This document shows, one piece after another, positions 22,160 through 45,995 of a stretch of 64,000 nt of DNA. The notes under the pieces were generated by a model. It was not told where the DNA came from. It saw only the letters and a list, made by a program, of their open reading frames with translations, and did no database searches. The stretch is taken from IMG/VR virus record IMGVR_UViG_3300042923_000281, positions 212,979 to 276,978 of that record. One strand, given 5' to 3'. The position numbers and the translations under genes are program-made. Numbering within the stretch: position 1 is the first letter of the stretch; every line of letters starts with the position of its first letter.

Positions 22160-22187
22160 ATAATGTATCGCGCCAGAAGTCTTTAAA
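22160..22187 (-). promoter_or_regulatory. Putative phage early promoter
   Basis: TTTAAA-N14-TACATTAT upstream of the gp68-like gene. Confidence 0.65.
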
Positions 22188-22806
22188 CGAATTTCCACTG
22201 GGCGAACTTGGGTGATGTCGCATCAAGCCGTGCTCTGGCAGTTCCTAACGGAATACCGAGAGCTATTGCTGCATCGCGCACCCCAGCGTATCTCACACCG
22301 TCGATGAGGACGGGTCGCTTGAGGTGGTCTTTAGCAGAGCTCATTCGATCAAGCGTTTCTGGACTACGTTTCAACCCAGTGTTTGCTTGTCGAACAGCTT
22401 CACGGGCCTCGTCAGACACAACGTGGCCTTTGGCGTATTGGTTACCGATGGAACGTTGACGGTTCTTCTCGATGATGTGCTCTGGAACATTACCTGGAGT
22501 CCAGCCTGGAATTGCATTGACGGCTACATTACAGCAATCTGGATCGTGCCAGTATTTATCCAGCAAAGTCTGCTCGCCACGGCGAGCCTCCTCTACAGAA
22601 CTAGCGACTGCGATCTCAATGGAGATGTCATCGAGCGATGTGAACACCTCCTGCAACTTGGCGTTGTAGTGGGTGCCGTTGACTAGACTGTTACGATGAA
22701 CGTGAAAGCGTTCTTGCAAGTTCTGAGTAGAACCTACGTAGAATCGACCGGTCGGATTGTGAATAATGGCGTACGCACCAGGTGCTTTAGCAAGTGGAGA
22801 TCCCAT
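22183..22806 (-). mobile_element. Free-standing GIY-YIG homing endonuclease gene
   Basis: GAY...FYVGS...R...H...E...N catalytic pattern; NUMOD3-like repeats (GHVVSDEAREAVR, GLKRSPETLDRMS); C-terminal HTH (PVLIDGVRY...AAIALGI). Confidence 0.9.
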
Positions 22807-22944: not shown

Positions 22945-23730
22945 TTAAAGAGGCACGTCGTCACTGAAGTCAAAGCCAGTGCCGCCAGATACCTGCGCAG
23001 GCGCTTGAGACTGACCACCACCGTTGCCACCCCAACCACCACCGCCGGAATTACCGCCGCCGTTGTTGTTGCCGCCCCAGTTATTACCCCCGCCACCTTG
23101 ACGGTTACCGCCACCACCATTACCGCCCCACTGGCCACCGCCACCGTTGTTCTGCTCACGGCGCTGCATCCAGGCTGGCTTGGCGTAGTTCTTCTCGATC
23201 ACGACTGGCAGGTATTCACGAACGACGTCGATCCAACCCAGGCAGTACAGTTTCGAGGCCACGTCTACCGGCATGCTGCCTTGGCCATCACGGAACTGAT
23301 GGTAGGTGCAGTCGAGGAACGGGAATTCGATCAGCGGACGGTTTTTACCGGCACTGATGCAGATGGAGATCACGCCTTCGTTCGTCTTCTCGAGCTTGAT
23401 CATGCTCATGATGGACGGGTTCGGATCACGCTTCTTATCAACGAAGCGGTGGCCTTTGTTGTCCAGGAAGACAATGGTCGGGCCGTTCGAGTTGGCCACG
23501 AGTTCCAGAGCGCGAAGGACCGAGAAGAACGCACGGTTAGACAACGCCGCTTCGATCTTGCCATGGTTCTTGTCGTTCGGTACACGGGTCTTCACGACCA
23601 GACGCGGGTTGTTTTCGTAGTAAGCCGGACGCAGAGTAGGCTCGCCTTCCATGCCGTCTTGCTTCTTCGCTTTGAGGGCCAGGGAAGGGTCGTCCAGGAT
23701 TGTTTCCGGACGCGCGTTCTGTTCGCTCAT
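22945..23730 (-). CDS. chmC: Nucleic-acid-binding protein, ChmC-like (phiKZ gp67 position), with a G/N-rich tail
   Basis: Upstream neighbour of the gp68-like gene apart from the endonuclease; folded N-terminus, GGNN/W low-complexity tail, ends FDFSDDVPL. Confidence 0.68.
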   Translation of the reverse strand: MSEQNARPETILDDPSLALKAKKQDGMEGEPTLRPAYYENNPRLVVKTRVPNDKNHGKIEAALSNRAFFSVLRALELVANSNGPTIVFLDNKGHRFVDKKRDPNPSIMSMIKLEKTNEGVISICISAGKNRPLIEFPFLDCTYHQFRDGQGSMPVDVASKLYCLGWIDVVREYLPVVIEKNYAKPAWMQRREQNNGGGGQWGGNGGGGNRQGGGGNNWGGNNNGGGNSGGGGWGGNGGGQSQAPAQVSGGTGFDFSDDVPL

Positions 23731-42107: not shown

Positions 42108-42319
42108 CGCGGTTCAGCACCCGTGCTGTCGTGGTTGATCTTGATGGTCAGGACCAGTTCACTGAAGGTCCCCGTCGTATTGACCTGAAGACCCACTTCA
42201 CTGCCCGGCCTGTCTTCTTGAAGCCGCTCAGCCAAGCTACCGATGTCACTGGCGTAGCGGTACGGGATACCGACGCCTTCAGCCAGCTTGGTGATACGTG
42301 TCTTGACGTTATTGCTCAT
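42104..42319 (-). CDS. Hypothetical protein (71 aa)
   Basis: GGAGA RBS; coupled overlaps. Confidence 0.7.
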   Translation of the reverse strand: MSNNVKTRITKLAEGVGIPYRYASDIGSLAERLQEDRPGSEVGLQVNTTGTFSELVLTIKINHDSTGAEPR

Positions 42320-43127
42320 CGGCTTTCTCCGACGCCACCGGTGGCGTCAAGTAGGTCGGGCTGAACTGCGGCTCGGAGCTGTCGATCGTGGATTCCGAGA
42401 TGATCGGGAAATCAGGATCACGAGGACGCAGGCGAGGACCACGGAACAGAGGCCGGGGTTCGGTCTGGGTGCTGTCGCTCCAGGTCTTGACGACTTGGAG
42501 AGGCGCCCATGCAGTGAGGATGTCAGCTTGGGTAGCCGATTCCACTTCCTGCCACTGGATGGTCCGGTACTTGCCTTCGGCGTCCAGCAACTGCATGTTG
42601 CCTTTCTTGCCATTACGACAGAAGGTGATCTGCACCAGTTCGTGGATGGTCATTTCTTCAGCGAGCAGCTCACCGACCGGCATCAACTTGCGATTCAGGA
42701 TGGTGTCACGCAGGGTGAAGTACAGCATGGTGTTCTTGAAGACCCGACGGGAGACCTTCTTCGCCTTACGGCCAAGGTGGATGGTGCCCTTCTCGCGCAT
42801 TTTGGTCTTGAGCTTCTTGCCAGCCCAGCCGATCAGCAGATCACTTTCTTTCAGCGCATTGTGATCGAATGCAGTCAGCGGATTGAAGCCGGCACGACGT
42901 GCGTACTTCATCAGTTTGTTCTGGAACTCTGCCTTGGAGCGTTTCTGACGGAAGCCATAAGCGACTTCTTGACGCAATACACCGCGCCACAGTTGACGGC
43001 GAGTGAGTTCGATGCGTTCCATGTAGTTCATGTTGCGAGGTTCCTTGATGGAATAGCCACTGAGGCCGTGCTTGTTTCGAAGCACGACCCCATCAGCGCC
43101 AATAGAAAGGTTGGAGTGGAAGTCCAT
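42309..43127 (-). CDS. Basic hypothetical protein (272 aa)
   Basis: TGATG overlap; K/R-rich. Confidence 0.75.
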   Translation of the reverse strand: MDFHSNLSIGADGVVLRNKHGLSGYSIKEPRNMNYMERIELTRRQLWRGVLRQEVAYGFRQKRSKAEFQNKLMKYARRAGFNPLTAFDHNALKESDLLIGWAGKKLKTKMREKGTIHLGRKAKKVSRRVFKNTMLYFTLRDTILNRKLMPVGELLAEEMTIHELVQITFCRNGKKGNMQLLDAEGKYRTIQWQEVESATQADILTAWAPLQVVKTWSDSTQTEPRPLFRGPRLRPRDPDFPIISESTIDSSEPQFSPTYLTPPVASEKADEQ

Positions 43128-43837
43128 CAGAACTTGAAGTTCGTCGGGAGGCCACCTTCTTCGAGGTTGGCTGGGGTGTGGAACTTGACCAGCTCTTCGT
43201 AACGAGCTTTGGCTTCGTCCATGTTTGCTGTCGGGTAGATCTCGACAGTCAGGGTTTCCCAGGTCTTGTATTCAGCCTGGAACTCAGTGCTTGGGTGCAC
43301 GCCGTATTCCAGCTTGTGGTTGTTCAGCTGGATAGCGTAGTCCAGGTCATCGCTGAAGCCCAGGATGCTGAAGGTGTCGTCTTCGTCGTCGAAGATGCGG
43401 AACGCACCGATCTTGCGAGGAGCGACCTTGAAGTCGTCAGCATGCACTTCTTTGAGCCAACTCGGCTCTTGGAAGTTGGCGTTGAAGCCGTAGCGCATCG
43501 CGTTGTTCTCGAAGACAGTGATCTCCGTGGCTTCAGGCCAGAAGGTCGTGATGTCGTCGATGCTTTCCACGTAGGCCATCATCATGTTGGCATCATGGGA
43601 CATGCGCACGATCCAGTACGGGTGGTACAACGGCCAGGCGATTGGGCGGGAGTCGTGGATGTACTCCGGGTCTTCCAGATGACGCGGAGGGACAGGCGAC
43701 AGGAAGCCCACACGGAACAGTGGCGTGCCGCCGTAGACCGGCTGCCACATGAACGCTTGTTCAGCGTGTGGCTTGGTAATGAGTTCGTACATCGGTTTGC
43801 CGTCAACACCGAGGATGACTTCTTTCTTCTGGCTCAT
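43127..43837 (-). CDS. Two-domain protein: phage WP..HPYW domain plus degenerate GIY-YIG domain
   Basis: AGGAG RBS, ATG 43837; C-terminus aligns by eye to the 22183..22806 nuclease domain. Confidence 0.75.
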   Translation of the reverse strand: MSQKKEVILGVDGKPMYELITKPHAEQAFMWQPVYGGTPLFRVGFLSPVPPRHLEDPEYIHDSRPIAWPLYHPYWIVRMSHDANMMMAYVESIDDITTFWPEATEITVFENNAMRYGFNANFQEPSWLKEVHADDFKVAPRKIGAFRIFDDEDDTFSILGFSDDLDYAIQLNNHKLEYGVHPSTEFQAEYKTWETLTVEIYPTANMDEAKARYEELVKFHTPANLEEGGLPTNFKF

Positions 43838-43847
43838 GGTGTAACTC

Positions 43848-44207
43848 CTAGCAGATGGGGCTAATGATGATGACCGTATCGTCAAGCTTGAAGCCTGGGA
43901 TCGGCAGTGGATCGCTCATGTCGGTGTAACCCAGTCCCGTGTTCATATCCACGAAGATCAGGCCAGTCAACACACGCTCCGGCGTGGTGGTGATTTCGAG
44001 GAACTCACGACGAGCGCCTTCAGAACTGCGAACCGGCGGGTGCATGGTGTCGTGTGGCCGCGGATGGGACTCGACACGCATGTTGATGGTGTGGTCGATG
44101 AAACGACCGAATACGCGGTAGACCTGCTCACTGCCACCGCGAAGGAATTCATCGCCCGGTAACAGGCGTTTGACGCTGATGGGTGTGCCTTGACGAGTAC
44201 GGCTCAT
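43848..44207 (-). CDS. Hypothetical protein (119 aa)
   Basis: AGGAA RBS before ATG 44207. Confidence 0.7.
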   Translation of the reverse strand: MSRTRQGTPISVKRLLPGDEFLRGGSEQVYRVFGRFIDHTINMRVESHPRPHDTMHPPVRSSEGARREFLEITTTPERVLTGLIFVDMNTGLGYTDMSDPLPIPGFKLDDTVIIISPIC

Positions 44208-44230
44208 GGTGAGGTTCCTGTTACTACATG

Positions 44231-44266
44231 CGGCATAAAGACCGTGGAAGATTCCCTCCACGGTCC
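44231..44266 (-). terminator. Hairpin+TTTATGCCG after phuZ
   Basis: GACCGTGGA-GGGAATCT-TCCACGGTC-TTTATGCCG. Confidence 0.75.
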
Positions 44267-44272
44267 TTGTGT

Positions 44273-45262
44273 TTACCAAACCAGGCCGGAGGCCGTTGGC
44301 TTGTCCTTGTCGCCGGTGAACGCCACTGCATCAGTCGCAGCTTGTTCTTGATCGGCGATTTCACGCTCGAGGTCTTCAACGCGCTTACGCAGTTCGCCCA
44401 TGGAGCCGTTTTCGATACCGAAGAACAGACTGCCTTTGGCTTGTGCGATGGATGGCATTACGCCGTAGGTGCTGTAAGGCACGAACATTTCCGGCGTTGG
44501 GTCGGTGGCTTCACGCAGCAGGTAAGCAGAGGCCAGAGCACCACTGCGCATCAGCTTGGTGAAGTCTTCGATGTTGTCGGAGACGTGCATGCGGCACAGT
44601 TGCGCGCGAGCCTTGGTCGACTTGGTGAAGTTGAACAGCGACTTCAAGTCTGCGGTGTCCAGGCCGTGGTTACGGCGAGAGACCAGAGCAGCCAAAGCGG
44701 TGATCATCAGGTGCGCTTCGTTGTCCACTGACTTGTCGGTCATCTGGCCAGGCTTGTTGAAGCCCAGATGGATGATGCCAGGCATGCCGCACGACCGCGA
44801 GATGTTGTCCAGGGTCTTCACGCCACCGATGGTGTTCTCGGCGTTGCGAATGGCCTGTTGAGCCCAGACCACGATACCCATGGCCATGTGACCATCGTCC
44901 AGCAGCTTCTTCAGGATCAGAGGACCCGATACCGAACCCGTACCGCCAGCCAGCGTGAAGACCACAACAGTCATGTCCGCTGGTGGGAACTTGCGCAGGA
45001 TGTCAGGCACTGCTTTGGCGATGGCTTCAGCGTTTTCAGGACGCAGACCGCCGGAACCGTCCAGGCCGTCGAACAGCCAGGTCTTGTCAACCAGACGATC
45101 ATCGAGGTTGGAGTCAGAGGTGTCCACGAAGCAGACGTCGATGTTTGCAACGTCAGCGCTGTGACCAGCTTCCAGGTATTCCTTAGCGATGTTCACACCG
45201 CCGCCACCACAGCCGATGATGCGCATGGTGCCTACAGGACGATTAGAGAGACCGTGACTCAT
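44273..45262 (-). CDS. phuZ: Tubulin-like spindle protein PhuZ
   Basis: IGCGGGGVN, DTSDSN, GSG, LAGGTGS tubulin signature, LDTAD T7 loop; GAGG RBS, ATG 45262. Confidence 0.95.
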   Translation of the reverse strand: MSHGLSNRPVGTMRIIGCGGGGVNIAKEYLEAGHSADVANIDVCFVDTSDSNLDDRLVDKTWLFDGLDGSGGLRPENAEAIAKAVPDILRKFPPADMTVVVFTLAGGTGSVSGPLILKKLLDDGHMAMGIVVWAQQAIRNAENTIGGVKTLDNISRSCGMPGIIHLGFNKPGQMTDKSVDNEAHLMITALAALVSRRNHGLDTADLKSLFNFTKSTKARAQLCRMHVSDNIEDFTKLMRSGALASAYLLREATDPTPEMFVPYSTYGVMPSIAQAKGSLFFGIENGSMGELRKRVEDLEREIADQEQAATDAVAFTGDKDKPTASGLVW

Positions 45263-45309
45263 TGTGACTACCTCATTGAGGGTTGTTGATTTGGGGGTTG
45301 CACACAATG

Positions 45310-45336
45310 ATAATGTATCACTGTGGAAAGTTTGAC
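45310..45336 (-). promoter_or_regulatory. Putative phage early promoter of phuZ
   Basis: GTCAAA-N13-TACATTAT. Confidence 0.7.
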
Positions 45337-45995
45337 TAGCTGCCTACACGCGCGGCTGCTGCGGTCAACTTACGAAGGCCCTTACGTTCACGGGCTTCGT
45401 TGATGATCATCAGCATCTGCGATTGCAACCGGTCACCGTACATGTTCTTCTCTTCGATGAAGTTCAGTCTGGCATAAATTTGCTCGATAAGGTCGCGTTC
45501 GCTCTGACCGAAATAGCGGAAGACGCCAGTGTAGCACTGCATCATCGTTTCCAGACTGTCCACGACTTCGCCGATTGGGTTGGTCTGTGCCATGTGGTCG
45601 ATGTCTTCAACCGTCTTGGCCAGAGCACCCACTTTACGGATCAGTTCCGGGAAGCAGCATTCGAATGACCAGAACGATTGTTGACGTGGACGGGCGCTGT
45701 ACAGCTTGTTTGCCACGTTCAACATGGAGAGGCTGACGATCATGCCGTCAACGCACAGACGCTGAATAATGGCTTTCGCATCGACGTCTTCGAAGAAGGC
45801 TGGACGACCCGTCATGGCCCGGACTTCGGTGTCAAACAAGGTGAACAGTTTGGACGTGTACTTGCAATGATGCAGGACCAAGTGCGTTAAACGGTGCGGT
45901 TTGGTCAGGTTGTAGATGTCGCCATGAAACAACCGATCGTGCAGCTCTTGGCGAAACTGAACCTCATCCCACAAACCTGCGATGTCGTTATTCAC
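45336..45995 (-). CDS. All-alpha protein, possibly MazG-like NTP pyrophosphatase
   Basis: Q..HD..FH.DI...RLTHLVLH..KY; VDGMIV; KTVEDIDH; AAGGAG RBS. Confidence 0.6.
   Translation of the reverse strand: MNNDIAGLWDEVQFRQELHDRLFHGDIYNLTKPHRLTHLVLHHCKYTSKLFTLFDTEVRAMTGRPAFFEDVDAKAIIQRLCVDGMIVSLSMLNVANKLYSARPRQQSFWSFECCFPELIRKVGALAKTVEDIDHMAQTNPIGEVVDSLETMMQCYTGVFRYFGQSERDLIEQIYARLNFIEEKNMYGDRLQSQMLMIINEARERKGLRKLTAAAARVGS

What the first reader, a model, noticed from the sequence alone, without database searches (positions are those of the whole stretch)
43170..43411. Acidified GIY-YIG domain lacking catalytic residues, related to the intact endonuclease in the same window
Seen: GAFRIFDDEDDTFSILGFSDDLDYAIQLNNHKLEYGVHPSTEFQAEYKTWETLTVEIYPTANMDEAKARYEELVKFH aligns almost gap-free with GAYAIIHNPTGRFYVGSTQNLQERFHVHRNSLVNGTHYNAKLQEVFTSLDDISIEIAVASSVEEARRGEQTLLDKY (22183-22806). 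Scaffold positions are kept (GA.., F..G, L..G.H...Q, EI, EA). Both motif Tyr and the Arg are replaced, the metal-binding Glu position is Tyr, and the surface is strongly acidic. It is fused behind a DSRPIAWPLYHPYW...WPEA...F..P.W domain, two genes downstream of phuZ. Inference: a domesticated homing endonuclease fold reused as a decoy, DNA mimic or inhibitor.
Basis: partly seen in the sequence, partly recalled or inferred. Interest (0 to 1): 0.62.

Follow-up and report, generated by a model that had tools for sequence, protein, structure and literature searches.

The report
Dead GIY-YIG nuclease domain beside phage tubulin
A jumbo phage keeps, right next to its tubulin gene, a protein whose second half is a homing-endonuclease catalytic fold that has lost its catalytic residues and turned acidic yet stays under purifying selection, so the nuclease fold has been recycled for a non-cutting job that is still unknown.

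Summary
Gene 43127-43837(-) encodes a 236-aa protein. Residues 142-222 (window 43172-43414) form a GIY-YIG fold: VIA Z 11.0, rmsd 2.5 Å over 82 residues to I-TevI. It is homologous in sequence to phage GIY-YIG homing endonucleases (family profile E 1.4e-10 in 1.8 billion proteins; E 2.6e-6 to the window's own enzyme).

In 32 family members the second Tyr, the Arg and the metal-binding Glu positions are replaced (one Glu excepted). The first Tyr survives in 8, the His in 4. The domain carries net charge -6 to -12, against -5 to +4 in its nearest endonuclease relatives. dN/dS is 0.02-0.30.

The gene lies directly downstream of phuZ in 13 of 13 related loci. Two of five relatives searched have no Pfam-detectable GIY-YIG gene but keep this one, so it is a fixed gene, not a mobile element or a partner of the window's endonuclease.

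The better-conserved N-terminal half belongs to a large, unnamed family of small phage proteins.

I read the domain as an exapted, non-catalytic binding module. The decoy, DNA-mimic or inhibitor idea stays possible but untested; the acidity is not unusual for this proteome. A PhuZ-binding prediction gave no answer.

The parts
43127..43837 (-). Whole gene, 236 aa plus stop: N-terminal domain followed by a pseudo-GIY-YIG domain
   Evidence: ATG at 43837 with AGGAG 8 nt upstream. The TGA stop at 43129-43127 overlaps the next gene's ATG. The 26 homologues at 90% clustering are 230-240 aa.
43433..43732 (-). N-terminal domain (residues about 36-135): motifs RVGF, D-x-R-P-I-x-W-P-x-x-H-P-Y-W, W-P-E-A, F-x-x-x-F-x-x-P-x-W
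   Evidence: This is the most conserved part (mean top-residue frequency 0.73, against 0.59 for the C-domain). More than 200 clusters at 50% identity carry the core, mostly as stand-alone 77-125-aa proteins, for example PaBG_00027. No Pfam, PHROG or NCBIfam hit. AF2 model pLDDT 95. The best PDB matches are only generic ferredoxin-like arrangements: Z 4.9, Foldseek E 0.17.
43172..43414 (-). Pseudo-GIY-YIG domain (residues 142-222): beta-beta-alpha-alpha-beta-alpha, without catalytic Tyr/Tyr/Arg/His/Glu, net charge -10
   Evidence: AF2 secondary structure E144-150, E153-162, H165-178, H184-189, E196-202, H206-220. VIA Z 11.0, rmsd 2.5 Å over 82 aa to I-TevI 1ln0. The next hits are UvrC, PD-T4-3, R.Eco29kI and T4 EndoII, with a plant glutaredoxin N-terminal domain at rank 4. 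Foldseek TM 0.73. BFVD and Atlas hits are almost all GIY-YIG.
43130..43171 (-). C-terminal tail (residues 223-236): low-confidence acidic linker, then a semi-conserved G-L-P-T-N-[FL]-x-[FI] end
   Evidence: pLDDT below 50 for residues 224-236. T232 is present in 27 of 32 members and L230/P231 in most. It may be a short docking motif; this was not tested.
44273..45307 (-). phuZ (phage tubulin), same strand. It lies upstream of the target in every related locus
   Evidence: phrog_4733 'tubulin PhuZ', E 8.4e-67. phuZ is followed by the target, with at most one small gene between, in 13 of 13 related loci. The real start is probably the internal ATG near 45262.
43848..44207 (-). Small intervening gene (about 119 aa from the first ATG), not universally present
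   Evidence: Recognisable homologues in L001, L009 and L010. In six related loci phuZ abuts the target directly. No family hit.
42309..43127 (-). Downstream basic protein (272 aa, net +15, pI 9.9). Its start codon overlaps the target's stop (TGATG)
   Evidence: Found directly downstream in L009-L012, L014 and L018. Absent from the complete relatives DT01 and G005, so it is not an obligate partner.
22183..22806 (-). Intact I-TevI-type GIY-YIG homing endonuclease of the same genome (the comparison partner)
   Evidence: Pfam GIY-YIG E 1.4e-6, I-TevI_DNA-bd E 0.003. phrog_314 'homing endonuclease' E 1.6e-14. Full Y/Y/R/H/H/E/N set. It is the only Pfam GIY-YIG hit in the genome.

Best explanation
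The gene encodes a non-catalytic, two-domain protein that is a fixed gene of the pPa_SNUABM_DT01-like clade of PhuZ-encoding jumbo phages.

Shown:
- The C-terminal half descends from the catalytic domain of an I-TevI-type GIY-YIG homing endonuclease.
- The fold is intact.
- In 32 members the second motif Tyr, the Arg and the Glu positions are substituted (one Glu excepted). The first Tyr is kept in 8 and the His in 4.
- The basic residues of helix alpha1 are replaced by a conserved acidic and aromatic stripe: D163, D164, D166, Y167, Q170, L171, H174, Y178.
- The domain evolves under purifying selection.
- The gene is not mobile.

Inferred:
- The domain no longer cuts DNA and probably no longer binds it.
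- Its former active-site face has been remodelled into a binding surface for a basic protein, peptide or cation.
- It works with the N-terminal domain, which is itself a widespread, apparently non-enzymatic phage module rich in invariant Pro and Trp. Together they would act as a scaffold or adaptor made from the same transcription unit as PhuZ.

The partner and the biological process are not known.
For: Fold:
- Z 11.0, rmsd 2.5 Å over 82 aa to I-TevI. Five of the top six PDB representatives are GIY-YIG nucleases.
- Foldseek probability 1.0, TM 0.73.
- The BFVD and ESM Atlas lists are dominated by GIY-YIG endonucleases.

Homology:
- Pairwise E 7e-5.
- The family profile's top PDB sequence hit is I-TevI, E 0.04.
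- Hit to the own-genome endonuclease at E 2.6e-6.
- Library-wide hits down to E 1.4e-10, of which 9 of 11 pass as Pfam GIY-YIG and several carry I-TevI or NUMOD DNA-binding modules.

Loss of catalysis, column make-up over 32 members (mapping):
- Tyr6 position: F19, Y8, W4, V1.
- Tyr17 position: I21, L9, V1, S1.
- Arg27 position: A23, D6, Q2, S1.
- His31 position: N24, H4, Q2, T1, I1.
- Glu75 position: A20, Y9, G2, E1.
- The two solved I-TevI catalytic-domain entries that match are an E75A mutant (1mk0, by its title) and a chain with Ala at residue 27 (1ln0).

Charge shift: -6 to -12 in all 27 aligned members, against -5 to +4 in the nearest endonuclease domains.

Selection: C-domain dN/dS is 0.015-0.30 for pairs with dS below 1, similar to the N-domain.

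Fixed gene:
- Present downstream of phuZ in 13 of 13 related loci, at 41-95% identity.
- Kept in two complete relatives that have no Pfam GIY-YIG gene.
- No DNA-binding domain is detectable.

N-domain: invariant positions across 95 sequences are almost all Pro, Trp, Phe or Tyr plus one Arg. No enzyme family or fold matches it.
Against: - No direct functional evidence exists.
- I could not inspect model coordinates. The claim that the conserved stripe is solvent-exposed rests on helix periodicity and on the corresponding I-TevI residues (K26, K29/R30, K33, K37) being surface residues. It could instead be the interface with the N-domain.
- His181 (I-TevI His40), Tyr167, His174 and Tyr178 are nearly invariant and could form a relocated active or metal site.
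- The complex prediction with PhuZ returned no answer.
- Gene order is generally conserved in these phages, so synteny with phuZ may carry no functional meaning.
Confidence: 0.6

Rival explanations
1. Decoy, DNA mimic or nuclease inhibitor. The acidified nuclease fold imitates DNA or a nuclease subunit and sequesters a DNA-binding protein. Candidates are a host defence nuclease, a competing phage's homing endonuclease, or a basic phage protein.
For: - The domain has net charge -10 over 81 aa, conserved in all members.
- Basic helix-alpha1 residues of I-TevI are replaced by a conserved acidic and aromatic stripe.
- The gene is translationally coupled to a strongly basic 272-aa protein (+15, pI 9.9).
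- Stand-alone N-domain homologues lie among small hypothetical genes, with a Sir2-like gene, a methyltransferase and NUDIX/MazG-type genes nearby.
Against: - The acidity is not exceptional here. 5.4% of all 81-aa windows, and 97 of 295 crude proteins, have a window at least as acidic. The whole protein ranks 25th of 295.
- Two complete relatives lack any Pfam GIY-YIG gene but keep the protein, so it is not a dedicated inhibitor of the phage's own endonuclease.
- The basic neighbour is absent from DT01 and G005.
- No similarity to known DNA mimics appeared in any fold search.
Confidence: 0.18
2. PhuZ accessory factor. The protein regulates or anchors the phage tubulin spindle, for example by linking filaments to the nucleus shell or capsids, or by capping filaments. 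The disordered tail ending in LPTN[FL]x[FI] could serve as a docking peptide.
For: - Strict co-orientation and adjacency to phuZ in 13 of 13 loci spanning 41-95% identity. In six loci nothing lies between them.
- The window genes have short or overlapping junctions, consistent with one operon.
- The C-terminal motif is semi-conserved behind a low-confidence linker.
Against: - Neighbouring genes alone are weak evidence.
- The family was not found by tblastn in phiKZ or Noxifer.
- No other line of evidence bears on binding.
Confidence: 0.12
3. Still an enzyme with migrated catalytic residues. The invariant Tyr167, His174, Tyr178 and His181 (with Asp164 and Asp166) would form a new metal or active site for a nuclease or another phosphoryl-transfer reaction.
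For: - These residues are 91-100% conserved over 32 members.
- His181 corresponds to the conserved His40 of I-TevI.
- Some pseudoenzymes turn out to have relocated catalytic residues (abstract of PMC10211241, seen).
Against: - The Arg and Glu positions are lost in all members but one. Their loss is what the solved inactive I-TevI variants carry.
- The positive DNA-binding face is gone.
- There is no DNA-binding domain.
- His181 is Cys or Leu in two distant members.
Confidence: 0.07
4. Decaying remnant of a homing endonuclease that happened to fuse to an upstream gene and has no function of its own.
For: - Catalytic residues are lost.
- The C-domain is less conserved than the N-domain (0.59 against 0.73).
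Against: - dN/dS is 0.015-0.30.
- The reading frame is intact in all 32 members.
- About a dozen positions are conserved at 90% or more, including family-specific ones.
- The AF2 fold is confident (pLDDT 86-97).
- The fusion persists down to 41% identity.
Confidence: 0.02

Closest known systems
I-TevI catalytic domain (PDB 1ln0, 1mk0) and related phage GIY-YIG homing endonucleases, including the window's own 22183-22806 enzyme and P0081, P0171, P0175
   Same: Same beta-beta-alpha-alpha-beta-alpha fold (Z 11.0). Shared scaffold motifs: G at the GIY position, G of YIG, L-x-x-G-x-H, F/L-Q and the E-A helix start. The nearest canonical relative, P0081, sits on a contig from a related jumbo phage.
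   Different: No catalytic Tyr/Tyr/Arg/His/Glu set. Acidic instead of neutral to basic. The domain is C-terminal rather than N-terminal, and no NUMOD or I-TevI DNA-binding domain follows it. The gene is fixed and syntenic rather than sporadic.
Degenerate GIY-YIG copies inside tandem-domain homing endonucleases (P0094, P0128, P0156, P0162, P0107, P0117, P0159) and the stand-alone 95-aa P0169
   Same: These are GIY-YIG-like domains that have lost the catalytic residues but are retained in phage proteins. They score 20-45 bits against the target's domain HMM. P0169 even shares the C-terminal helix pattern.
   Different: Those copies are not acidified (-4 to +4). All but P0169 sit in front of a further GIY-YIG copy, which is canonical in six of the seven proteins, and most also carry a DNA-binding region. 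They therefore probably assist a working nuclease. The target has no active copy and a different N-terminal partner.
CapR of the Vibrio cholerae satellite PLE, described as a domesticated endonuclease (PMC8096241)
   Same: A precedent that a phage-world endonuclease can be domesticated for a non-homing role (title and abstract seen).
   Different: From my own knowledge, not read here, CapR acts as a DNA-binding repressor. The target keeps only the catalytic fold, has no detectable DNA-binding domain, and is acidic.
Inactive GIY-YIG-family proteins noted elsewhere, for example MMSYN1_0777 of JCVI-syn3.0 (PMC13621843)
   Same: Annotated as an inactive GIY-YIG-family nuclease retained in a minimal genome.
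   Different: A bacterial membrane-anchored protein. No sequence relationship was tested, and the context is different.
PaBG_00027 and other stand-alone small phage proteins carrying the N-terminal domain
   Same: Same N-domain (33% identity, E 2e-11 by tblastn; TM 0.79 to the BFVD model of S5WK67).
   Different: These are single-domain proteins of about 80-100 aa, or fusions to PRA-PH/MazG, Lar, GNAT, DUF551 or zinc ribbons. None carries the pseudo-GIY-YIG domain, and they are not next to phuZ.

Membership tests
GIY-YIG nuclease superfamily (fold and descent) | Three-stranded sheet with flanking helices in the order beta-beta-alpha-alpha-beta-alpha | tested here: met
   AF2 model. Z 11.0, rmsd 2.5 Å over 82 aa to I-TevI. 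Foldseek TM 0.73.
GIY-YIG nuclease superfamily (fold and descent) | Statistically significant sequence similarity to bona fide members | tested here: met
   E 7e-5 pairwise. E 2.6e-6 in the own genome. E 1.4e-10 library-wide, with 9 of 11 hits being Pfam GIY-YIG.
GIY-YIG nuclease superfamily (fold and descent) | Passes the Pfam PF01541 gathering score | tested here: not met
   No hit for the window protein at E up to 1. One of 27 members hits at E 0.052.
Active GIY-YIG nuclease | Tyr of the GIY motif (I-TevI Y6) | tested here: not met
   F146 here. Family make-up: F19, Y8, W4, V1.
Active GIY-YIG nuclease | Tyr of the YIG motif (I-TevI Y17) | tested here: not met
   I158 here. Family make-up: I21, L9, V1, S1.
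Active GIY-YIG nuclease | Catalytic Arg on helix alpha1 (I-TevI R27) | tested here: not met
   A168 here. Family make-up: A23, D6, Q2, S1; never Arg or Lys.
Active GIY-YIG nuclease | Metal-binding Glu on helix alpha3 (I-TevI E75) | tested here: not met
   Y213 here. Family make-up: A20, Y9, G2, E1.
Active GIY-YIG nuclease | Conserved Asn about 15 residues after the Glu (I-TevI N90) | tested here: inconclusive
   N233 aligns with it, but it lies in a tail with pLDDT below 50. The column is N13, T11.
GIY-YIG homing endonuclease (I-TevI type) | N-terminal nuclease domain tethered to a C-terminal DNA-binding region (NUMOD or I-TevI_DNA-bd) | tested here: not met
   The domain is C-terminal and followed by only 14 residues. 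No DNA-binding family was detected.
GIY-YIG homing endonuclease (I-TevI type) | Sporadic, mobile distribution among related genomes | tested here: not met
   Present at the same site, downstream of phuZ, in 13 of 13 related loci. By contrast, canonical GIY-YIG genes are present in only 3 of 5 relatives and at different positions.
DNA-mimic proteins (Ocr, ArdA, UGI type) | Exceptionally high negative charge density | tested here: inconclusive
   -0.12 per residue in the domain. However, 5.4% of 81-aa windows in this proteome are at least as acidic.
DNA-mimic proteins (Ocr, ArdA, UGI type) | Carboxylates arranged like DNA phosphates, and binding to a DNA-binding protein | not testable with these tools
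No binding assay is possible.
PhuZ-associated factor (hypothetical class) | Physical interaction with PhuZ | tested here: inconclusive
   Complex prediction returned 'no answer'.

The most novel reading that the evidence does not exclude
The recycled nuclease fold is one of two things. Either it is the business end of a new kind of phage counter-measure, an acidic pseudo-nuclease that traps a DNA-binding defence or competitor protein. Or it is part of the first dedicated accessory factor of the phage tubulin PhuZ. In both cases the widespread, unnamed N-terminal domain would act as a general-purpose targeting module that many phages also deploy on its own.
Probability: 0.15. Interest if true: 0.8.

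Novelty: new variant of a known kind. Interest (0 to 1): 0.45.

Why it matters
Homing endonucleases are usually seen as selfish passengers of phage genomes. Here the catalytic fold of one has become a fixed, selected, non-catalytic part of a core-like gene in a clade of nucleus-forming jumbo phages. That is a clean natural example of a pseudo-nuclease.

It also points to three testable things:
- A remodelled active-site face that should bind something.
- A large, undescribed family of small phage proteins (the N-domain), found in more than 200 clusters.
- A candidate partner gene of phuZ, for which no accessory factor is known to me.

A cultured relative exists: Pseudomonas phage pPa_SNUABM_DT01, gene PA10_00130. 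The questions are therefore experimentally reachable.

Tried and rejected
- Pfam, PHROGs and NCBIfam scans of the whole protein and of ten stand-alone N-domain proteins gave nothing.
- megablast of the region against the phage collection gave no match.
- An ESM Atlas feature search on the N-domain gave no usable hit.
- Fold searches with the N-domain alone gave only generic ferredoxin-like rows (Z at most 4.9, Foldseek E at least 0.17). I do not claim a new fold, only that no specific relative was found.
- Complex prediction for PhuZ plus the target gave 'no answer' (score 0.00, controls not run). This is not evidence either way.
- Genomic contexts of stand-alone N-domain proteins and of P0169 and P0081 were mostly short contigs. 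Neighbours were DnaB, Phage_ABA_S and a weak DUF6378 hit. There is also one fusion to PRA-PH and nearby NUDIX or dATP/dGTP diphosphohydrolase genes. This hints at replication or nucleotide-metabolism modules but is too thin to build on.
- The terminator and sigma-70 promoter scan was at background level.
- Public reads: one 19.3-kb contig of a relative (183 differing letters and 13 gaps over 2.4 kb) in a peat metatranscriptome library covers phuZ and the target. A contig in an RNA library does not show transcription.
- Rejected: a dedicated inhibitor of the window's endonuclease.
- Rejected: obligate pairing with the basic downstream protein.
- Rejected: a decaying pseudogene.
- Rejected: a special kinship with the window's endonuclease. 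It is not the nearest relative.

No alternative genetic code was used.
Full report
**What is there**

The window is the last 64 kb of a 276,978-bp viral record with direct terminal repeats. It is a jumbo phage. Its nearest named relative is Pseudomonas phage pPa_SNUABM_DT01 (69% protein identity for this gene). The paper describing that phage places it in the phiKZ/Noxifer cluster (PMC8541153).

The finding lies in a minus-strand ORF. The ORF listing starts it at a TTG (43885, 252 aa). The ATG at 43837 has an AGGAG 8 nt upstream, and all homologues are 230-240 aa. The gene is therefore 43127-43837(-), 236 aa.

It lies two genes downstream of phuZ (44273-45307; phrog_4733, E 8e-67). Its stop codon overlaps the start of the next gene (TGATG).

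Yes. BLASTP of the protein against the 22183-22806 product gives E 7e-5 (20% identity over 74 residues, one gap). That partner is a bona fide I-TevI-type GIY-YIG homing endonuclease. Its hits are Pfam GIY-YIG E 1.4e-6, a weak I-TevI DNA-binding domain hit, and phrog_314 E 1.6e-14.

I built a profile from 27 family members (A1). It gave three results:
- It finds that endonuclease as the only other hit in the whole phage genome (E 2.6e-6).
- It ranks the I-TevI catalytic domain first among all PDB sequences (E 0.04).
- In an exhaustive HMM search of 1.84 billion representatives it hits GIY-YIG endonucleases down to E 1.4e-10. Nine of 11 such hits pass as Pfam GIY-YIG, and several carry I-TevI_DNA-bd or NUMOD modules.

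**Fold**

The AlphaFold2 model has mean pLDDT 83.9 and pTM 0.78. It gives residues 144-220 as beta-beta-alpha-alpha-beta-alpha.

- Exhaustive alignment against 48,161 PDB representatives puts I-TevI first: Z 11.0, rmsd 2.5 Å over 82 residues. The next hits are UvrC, PD-T4-3, a plant glutaredoxin N-terminal domain, R.Eco29kI and T4 EndoII.
- Foldseek agrees (TM 0.73, probability 1.0).
- The viral (BFVD) and ESM Atlas libraries return almost only GIY-YIG endonucleases for this part.

**Catalytic residues**

I used the I-TevI alignment and a joint alignment with canonical enzymes. The table gives the window residue and the make-up over 32 members.

| I-TevI position | Window residue | Family make-up (32 members) |
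|---|---|---|
| Tyr6 | F146 | F19, Y8, W4, V1 |
| Tyr17 | I158 | I21, L9, V1, S1 |
| Arg27 | A168 | A23, D6, Q2, S1 |
| His31 | N172 | N24, H4, Q2, T1, I1 |
| His40 | H181 | H30 |
| Glu75 | Y213 | A20, Y9, G2, E1 |

The window's endonuclease, P0081, P0171 and P0175 all carry the full Y/Y/R/H/H/E/N set.

The two solved I-TevI catalytic-domain entries that match are an E75A mutant (1mk0) and a chain with Ala at residue 27 (1ln0). These are exactly the two positions lost in this family. Canonical catalysis is therefore very unlikely.

**Charge**

The domain's net charge is -10 over 81 residues here and -6 to -12 in all 27 aligned members. The homologous domains of the nearest endonucleases range from -5 to +4.

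In I-TevI the helix alpha1 residues K22, K26, R27, K29, R30 and K33 are basic. Here they are D163, Y167, A168, Q170, L171 and H174. The 'acidified' description is therefore correct relative to homologues.

The phage proteome is itself acidic, with a median of -0.023 per residue:
- 5.4% of all 81-aa windows are at least as negative.
- 97 of 295 crude proteins contain such a window.
- The whole protein ranks 25th of 295.

The acidity alone does not mark it as a DNA mimic.

**Is it functional?**

Pairwise Nei-Gojobori estimates were made on 13 genes: the window plus 12 viral contigs. For pairs with dS below 1, the C-domain gives dN/dS 0.015-0.30, comparable with the N-domain.

About a dozen C-domain positions are conserved at 90% or more. 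Some are shared scaffold positions: G144, G160, L176, G179, H181, Q187, A209. Others are family-specific: Y167, Q170, H174, Y178 and F219, with D166 and L171 at 88% and D164 matching the canonical N/D helix cap.

The positions 164, 167, 170/171, 174 and 178 have the spacing of one face of helix alpha1. That face adjoins the former catalytic face. I infer, but cannot show without coordinates, that this is a remodelled binding surface.

**Fixed gene, not a mobile element**

- In all 13 related loci (41-95% identity) the gene follows phuZ on the same strand. In six of them nothing lies between.
- Pfam-detectable GIY-YIG genes occur in only three of the five relatives searched, at unrelated positions. 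Two relatives, both 100% complete, have none but keep this gene.
- This excludes a dedicated relationship with the window's endonuclease.
- The window's endonuclease is not the closest relative. It scores 29 bits to the domain HMM. P0081 scores 62, P0175 scores 54 and P0171 scores 49.
- P0081 lies on a contig whose flanking gene is 79% identical to a gene of this genome, so it comes from a related jumbo phage. This suggests the fold was recruited from endonucleases circulating in this lineage.

**The N-terminal half**

Residues about 36-135 are the better-conserved part. Their core, roughly profile positions 60-130, occurs in more than 200 clusters at 50% identity. Most are stand-alone 77-125-aa proteins. 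Some are fused to PRA-PH/MazG, Lar, GNAT, DUF551 or zinc ribbons.

Named examples are PaBG_00027, RsoM2USA_77, Klebsiella phage 05F01 gene_258 and a 180-aa protein of phage csAssE-Sib.

None is in Pfam, PHROGs or NCBIfam. Folded alone with a 95-sequence alignment it reaches pLDDT 95. It matches only generic ferredoxin-like arrangements: best Z 4.9, Foldseek E 0.17.

The nearly invariant positions across the wide family are Pro, Trp, Phe and Tyr plus one Arg. That looks like a binding module rather than an enzyme. No other N-domain protein carries the pseudo-GIY-YIG domain. The fusion is confined to this clade: six clusters at 50% identity.

**Mechanism**

I commit to the following. The protein is a non-catalytic scaffold or adaptor. 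The exapted nuclease fold contributes a new acidic and aromatic binding face. The N-domain contributes a second binding function. The protein is made from the phuZ transcription unit. My confidence in this is about 0.6.

Shown: fold, descent, loss of catalytic and basic residues, purifying selection, fixed synteny.

Inferred: no DNA cleavage or binding, exposure of the conserved stripe, operon expression, binding of a partner.

Rivals:
- Decoy, DNA mimic or inhibitor: about 0.18.
- PhuZ accessory factor: about 0.12.
- Enzyme with migrated residues: about 0.07.
- Decaying remnant: about 0.02.

A complex prediction of PhuZ with the protein gave 'no answer'. It counts neither way.

The basic, translationally coupled downstream protein (+15, pI 9.9) would be an attractive partner for an acidic protein. 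However, it is missing from DT01 and from another complete relative.

**Comparison with what is known**

[quoted passage not shown] Several defining features of those two classes were tested and not met (see the membership table).

- Domesticated endonucleases are known, for example CapR of PLE (PMC8096241).
- Inactive GIY-YIG proteins have been noted before, for example MMSYN1_0777 (PMC13621843).
- I found no description of this family, of the N-domain family, or of a pseudo-GIY-YIG next to phuZ.

**Verdict**

It is a new variant of a known kind: a pseudo-enzyme derived from a selfish nuclease. Interest is moderate (0.45). The evolutionary story is clean and testable in a cultured relative, but the function remains open.

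Noticed in passing
Library proteins P0094, P0128, P0156, P0162, P0107, P0117, P0159 (not in the window): These phage GIY-YIG endonuclease-like proteins carry two or three GIY-YIG-like domains in tandem. The N-terminal copies lack the catalytic residues. In six of the seven the last copy is canonical (in P0156 it is degenerate too), and several proteins also carry an I-TevI-type DNA-binding region. I do not recall this architecture being described.
   Followed up: partly
window 43433-43732 (-), and P0032-P0175: The N-terminal domain (D-x-R-P-x-x-W-P-x-x-x-P-Y-W ... W-P-E-A ... F-x-x-R-F-P-x-P-x-W) defines a large family of small phage proteins with more than 200 clusters at 50% identity. It is absent from Pfam, PHROGs and NCBIfam and has no specific structural relative.
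   Followed up: partly
window 42309-43127 (-): A strongly basic 272-aa protein (+15, pI 9.9) with no family hit. Its ATG overlaps the target's stop. It is conserved downstream in six of the 13 related loci but absent from DT01 and another complete relative.
   Followed up: partly
P0169 (95 aa) on locus L024: A stand-alone degenerate GIY-YIG-like protein (L, L, A, A, Q, H, Y at the catalytic columns). It scores 45.5 bits to the target's domain HMM and shares its C-terminal helix pattern. The contig is only 2.4 kb, so the context is uninformative.
   Followed up: partly
window 22183-22806 (-) and relatives G001-G005: The intact GIY-YIG homing endonuclease is the only Pfam GIY-YIG hit in this genome. 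Canonical GIY-YIG genes are present in only 3 of 5 related genomes, at different positions, as expected for mobile elements.
   Followed up: partly
window 22945-23730 (-): A 261-aa ORF next to the endonuclease. It has a long Gly/Asn-rich linker (GGGGQWGGNGGGGNRQGGGG...) and ends in ...FDFSDDVPL. From memory this resembles the acidic C-terminal tip of single-stranded DNA-binding proteins.
   Followed up: no
window 42981-45400, run X18: A 19.3-kb contig of a relative (183 differing letters and 13 gaps over the 2.4 kb laid) in a peat metatranscriptome library spans phuZ and the target. Relatives also occur in soil, compost, food and dust metagenomes. A contig in an RNA library does not prove transcription.
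   Followed up: partly
window 43127-43885 (-): The mechanical ORF starts at a TTG 16 codons upstream of the likely true ATG start (43837, AGGAG RBS). Similarly, the phuZ and intervening-gene ORFs are probably shorter than listed.
   Followed up: yes
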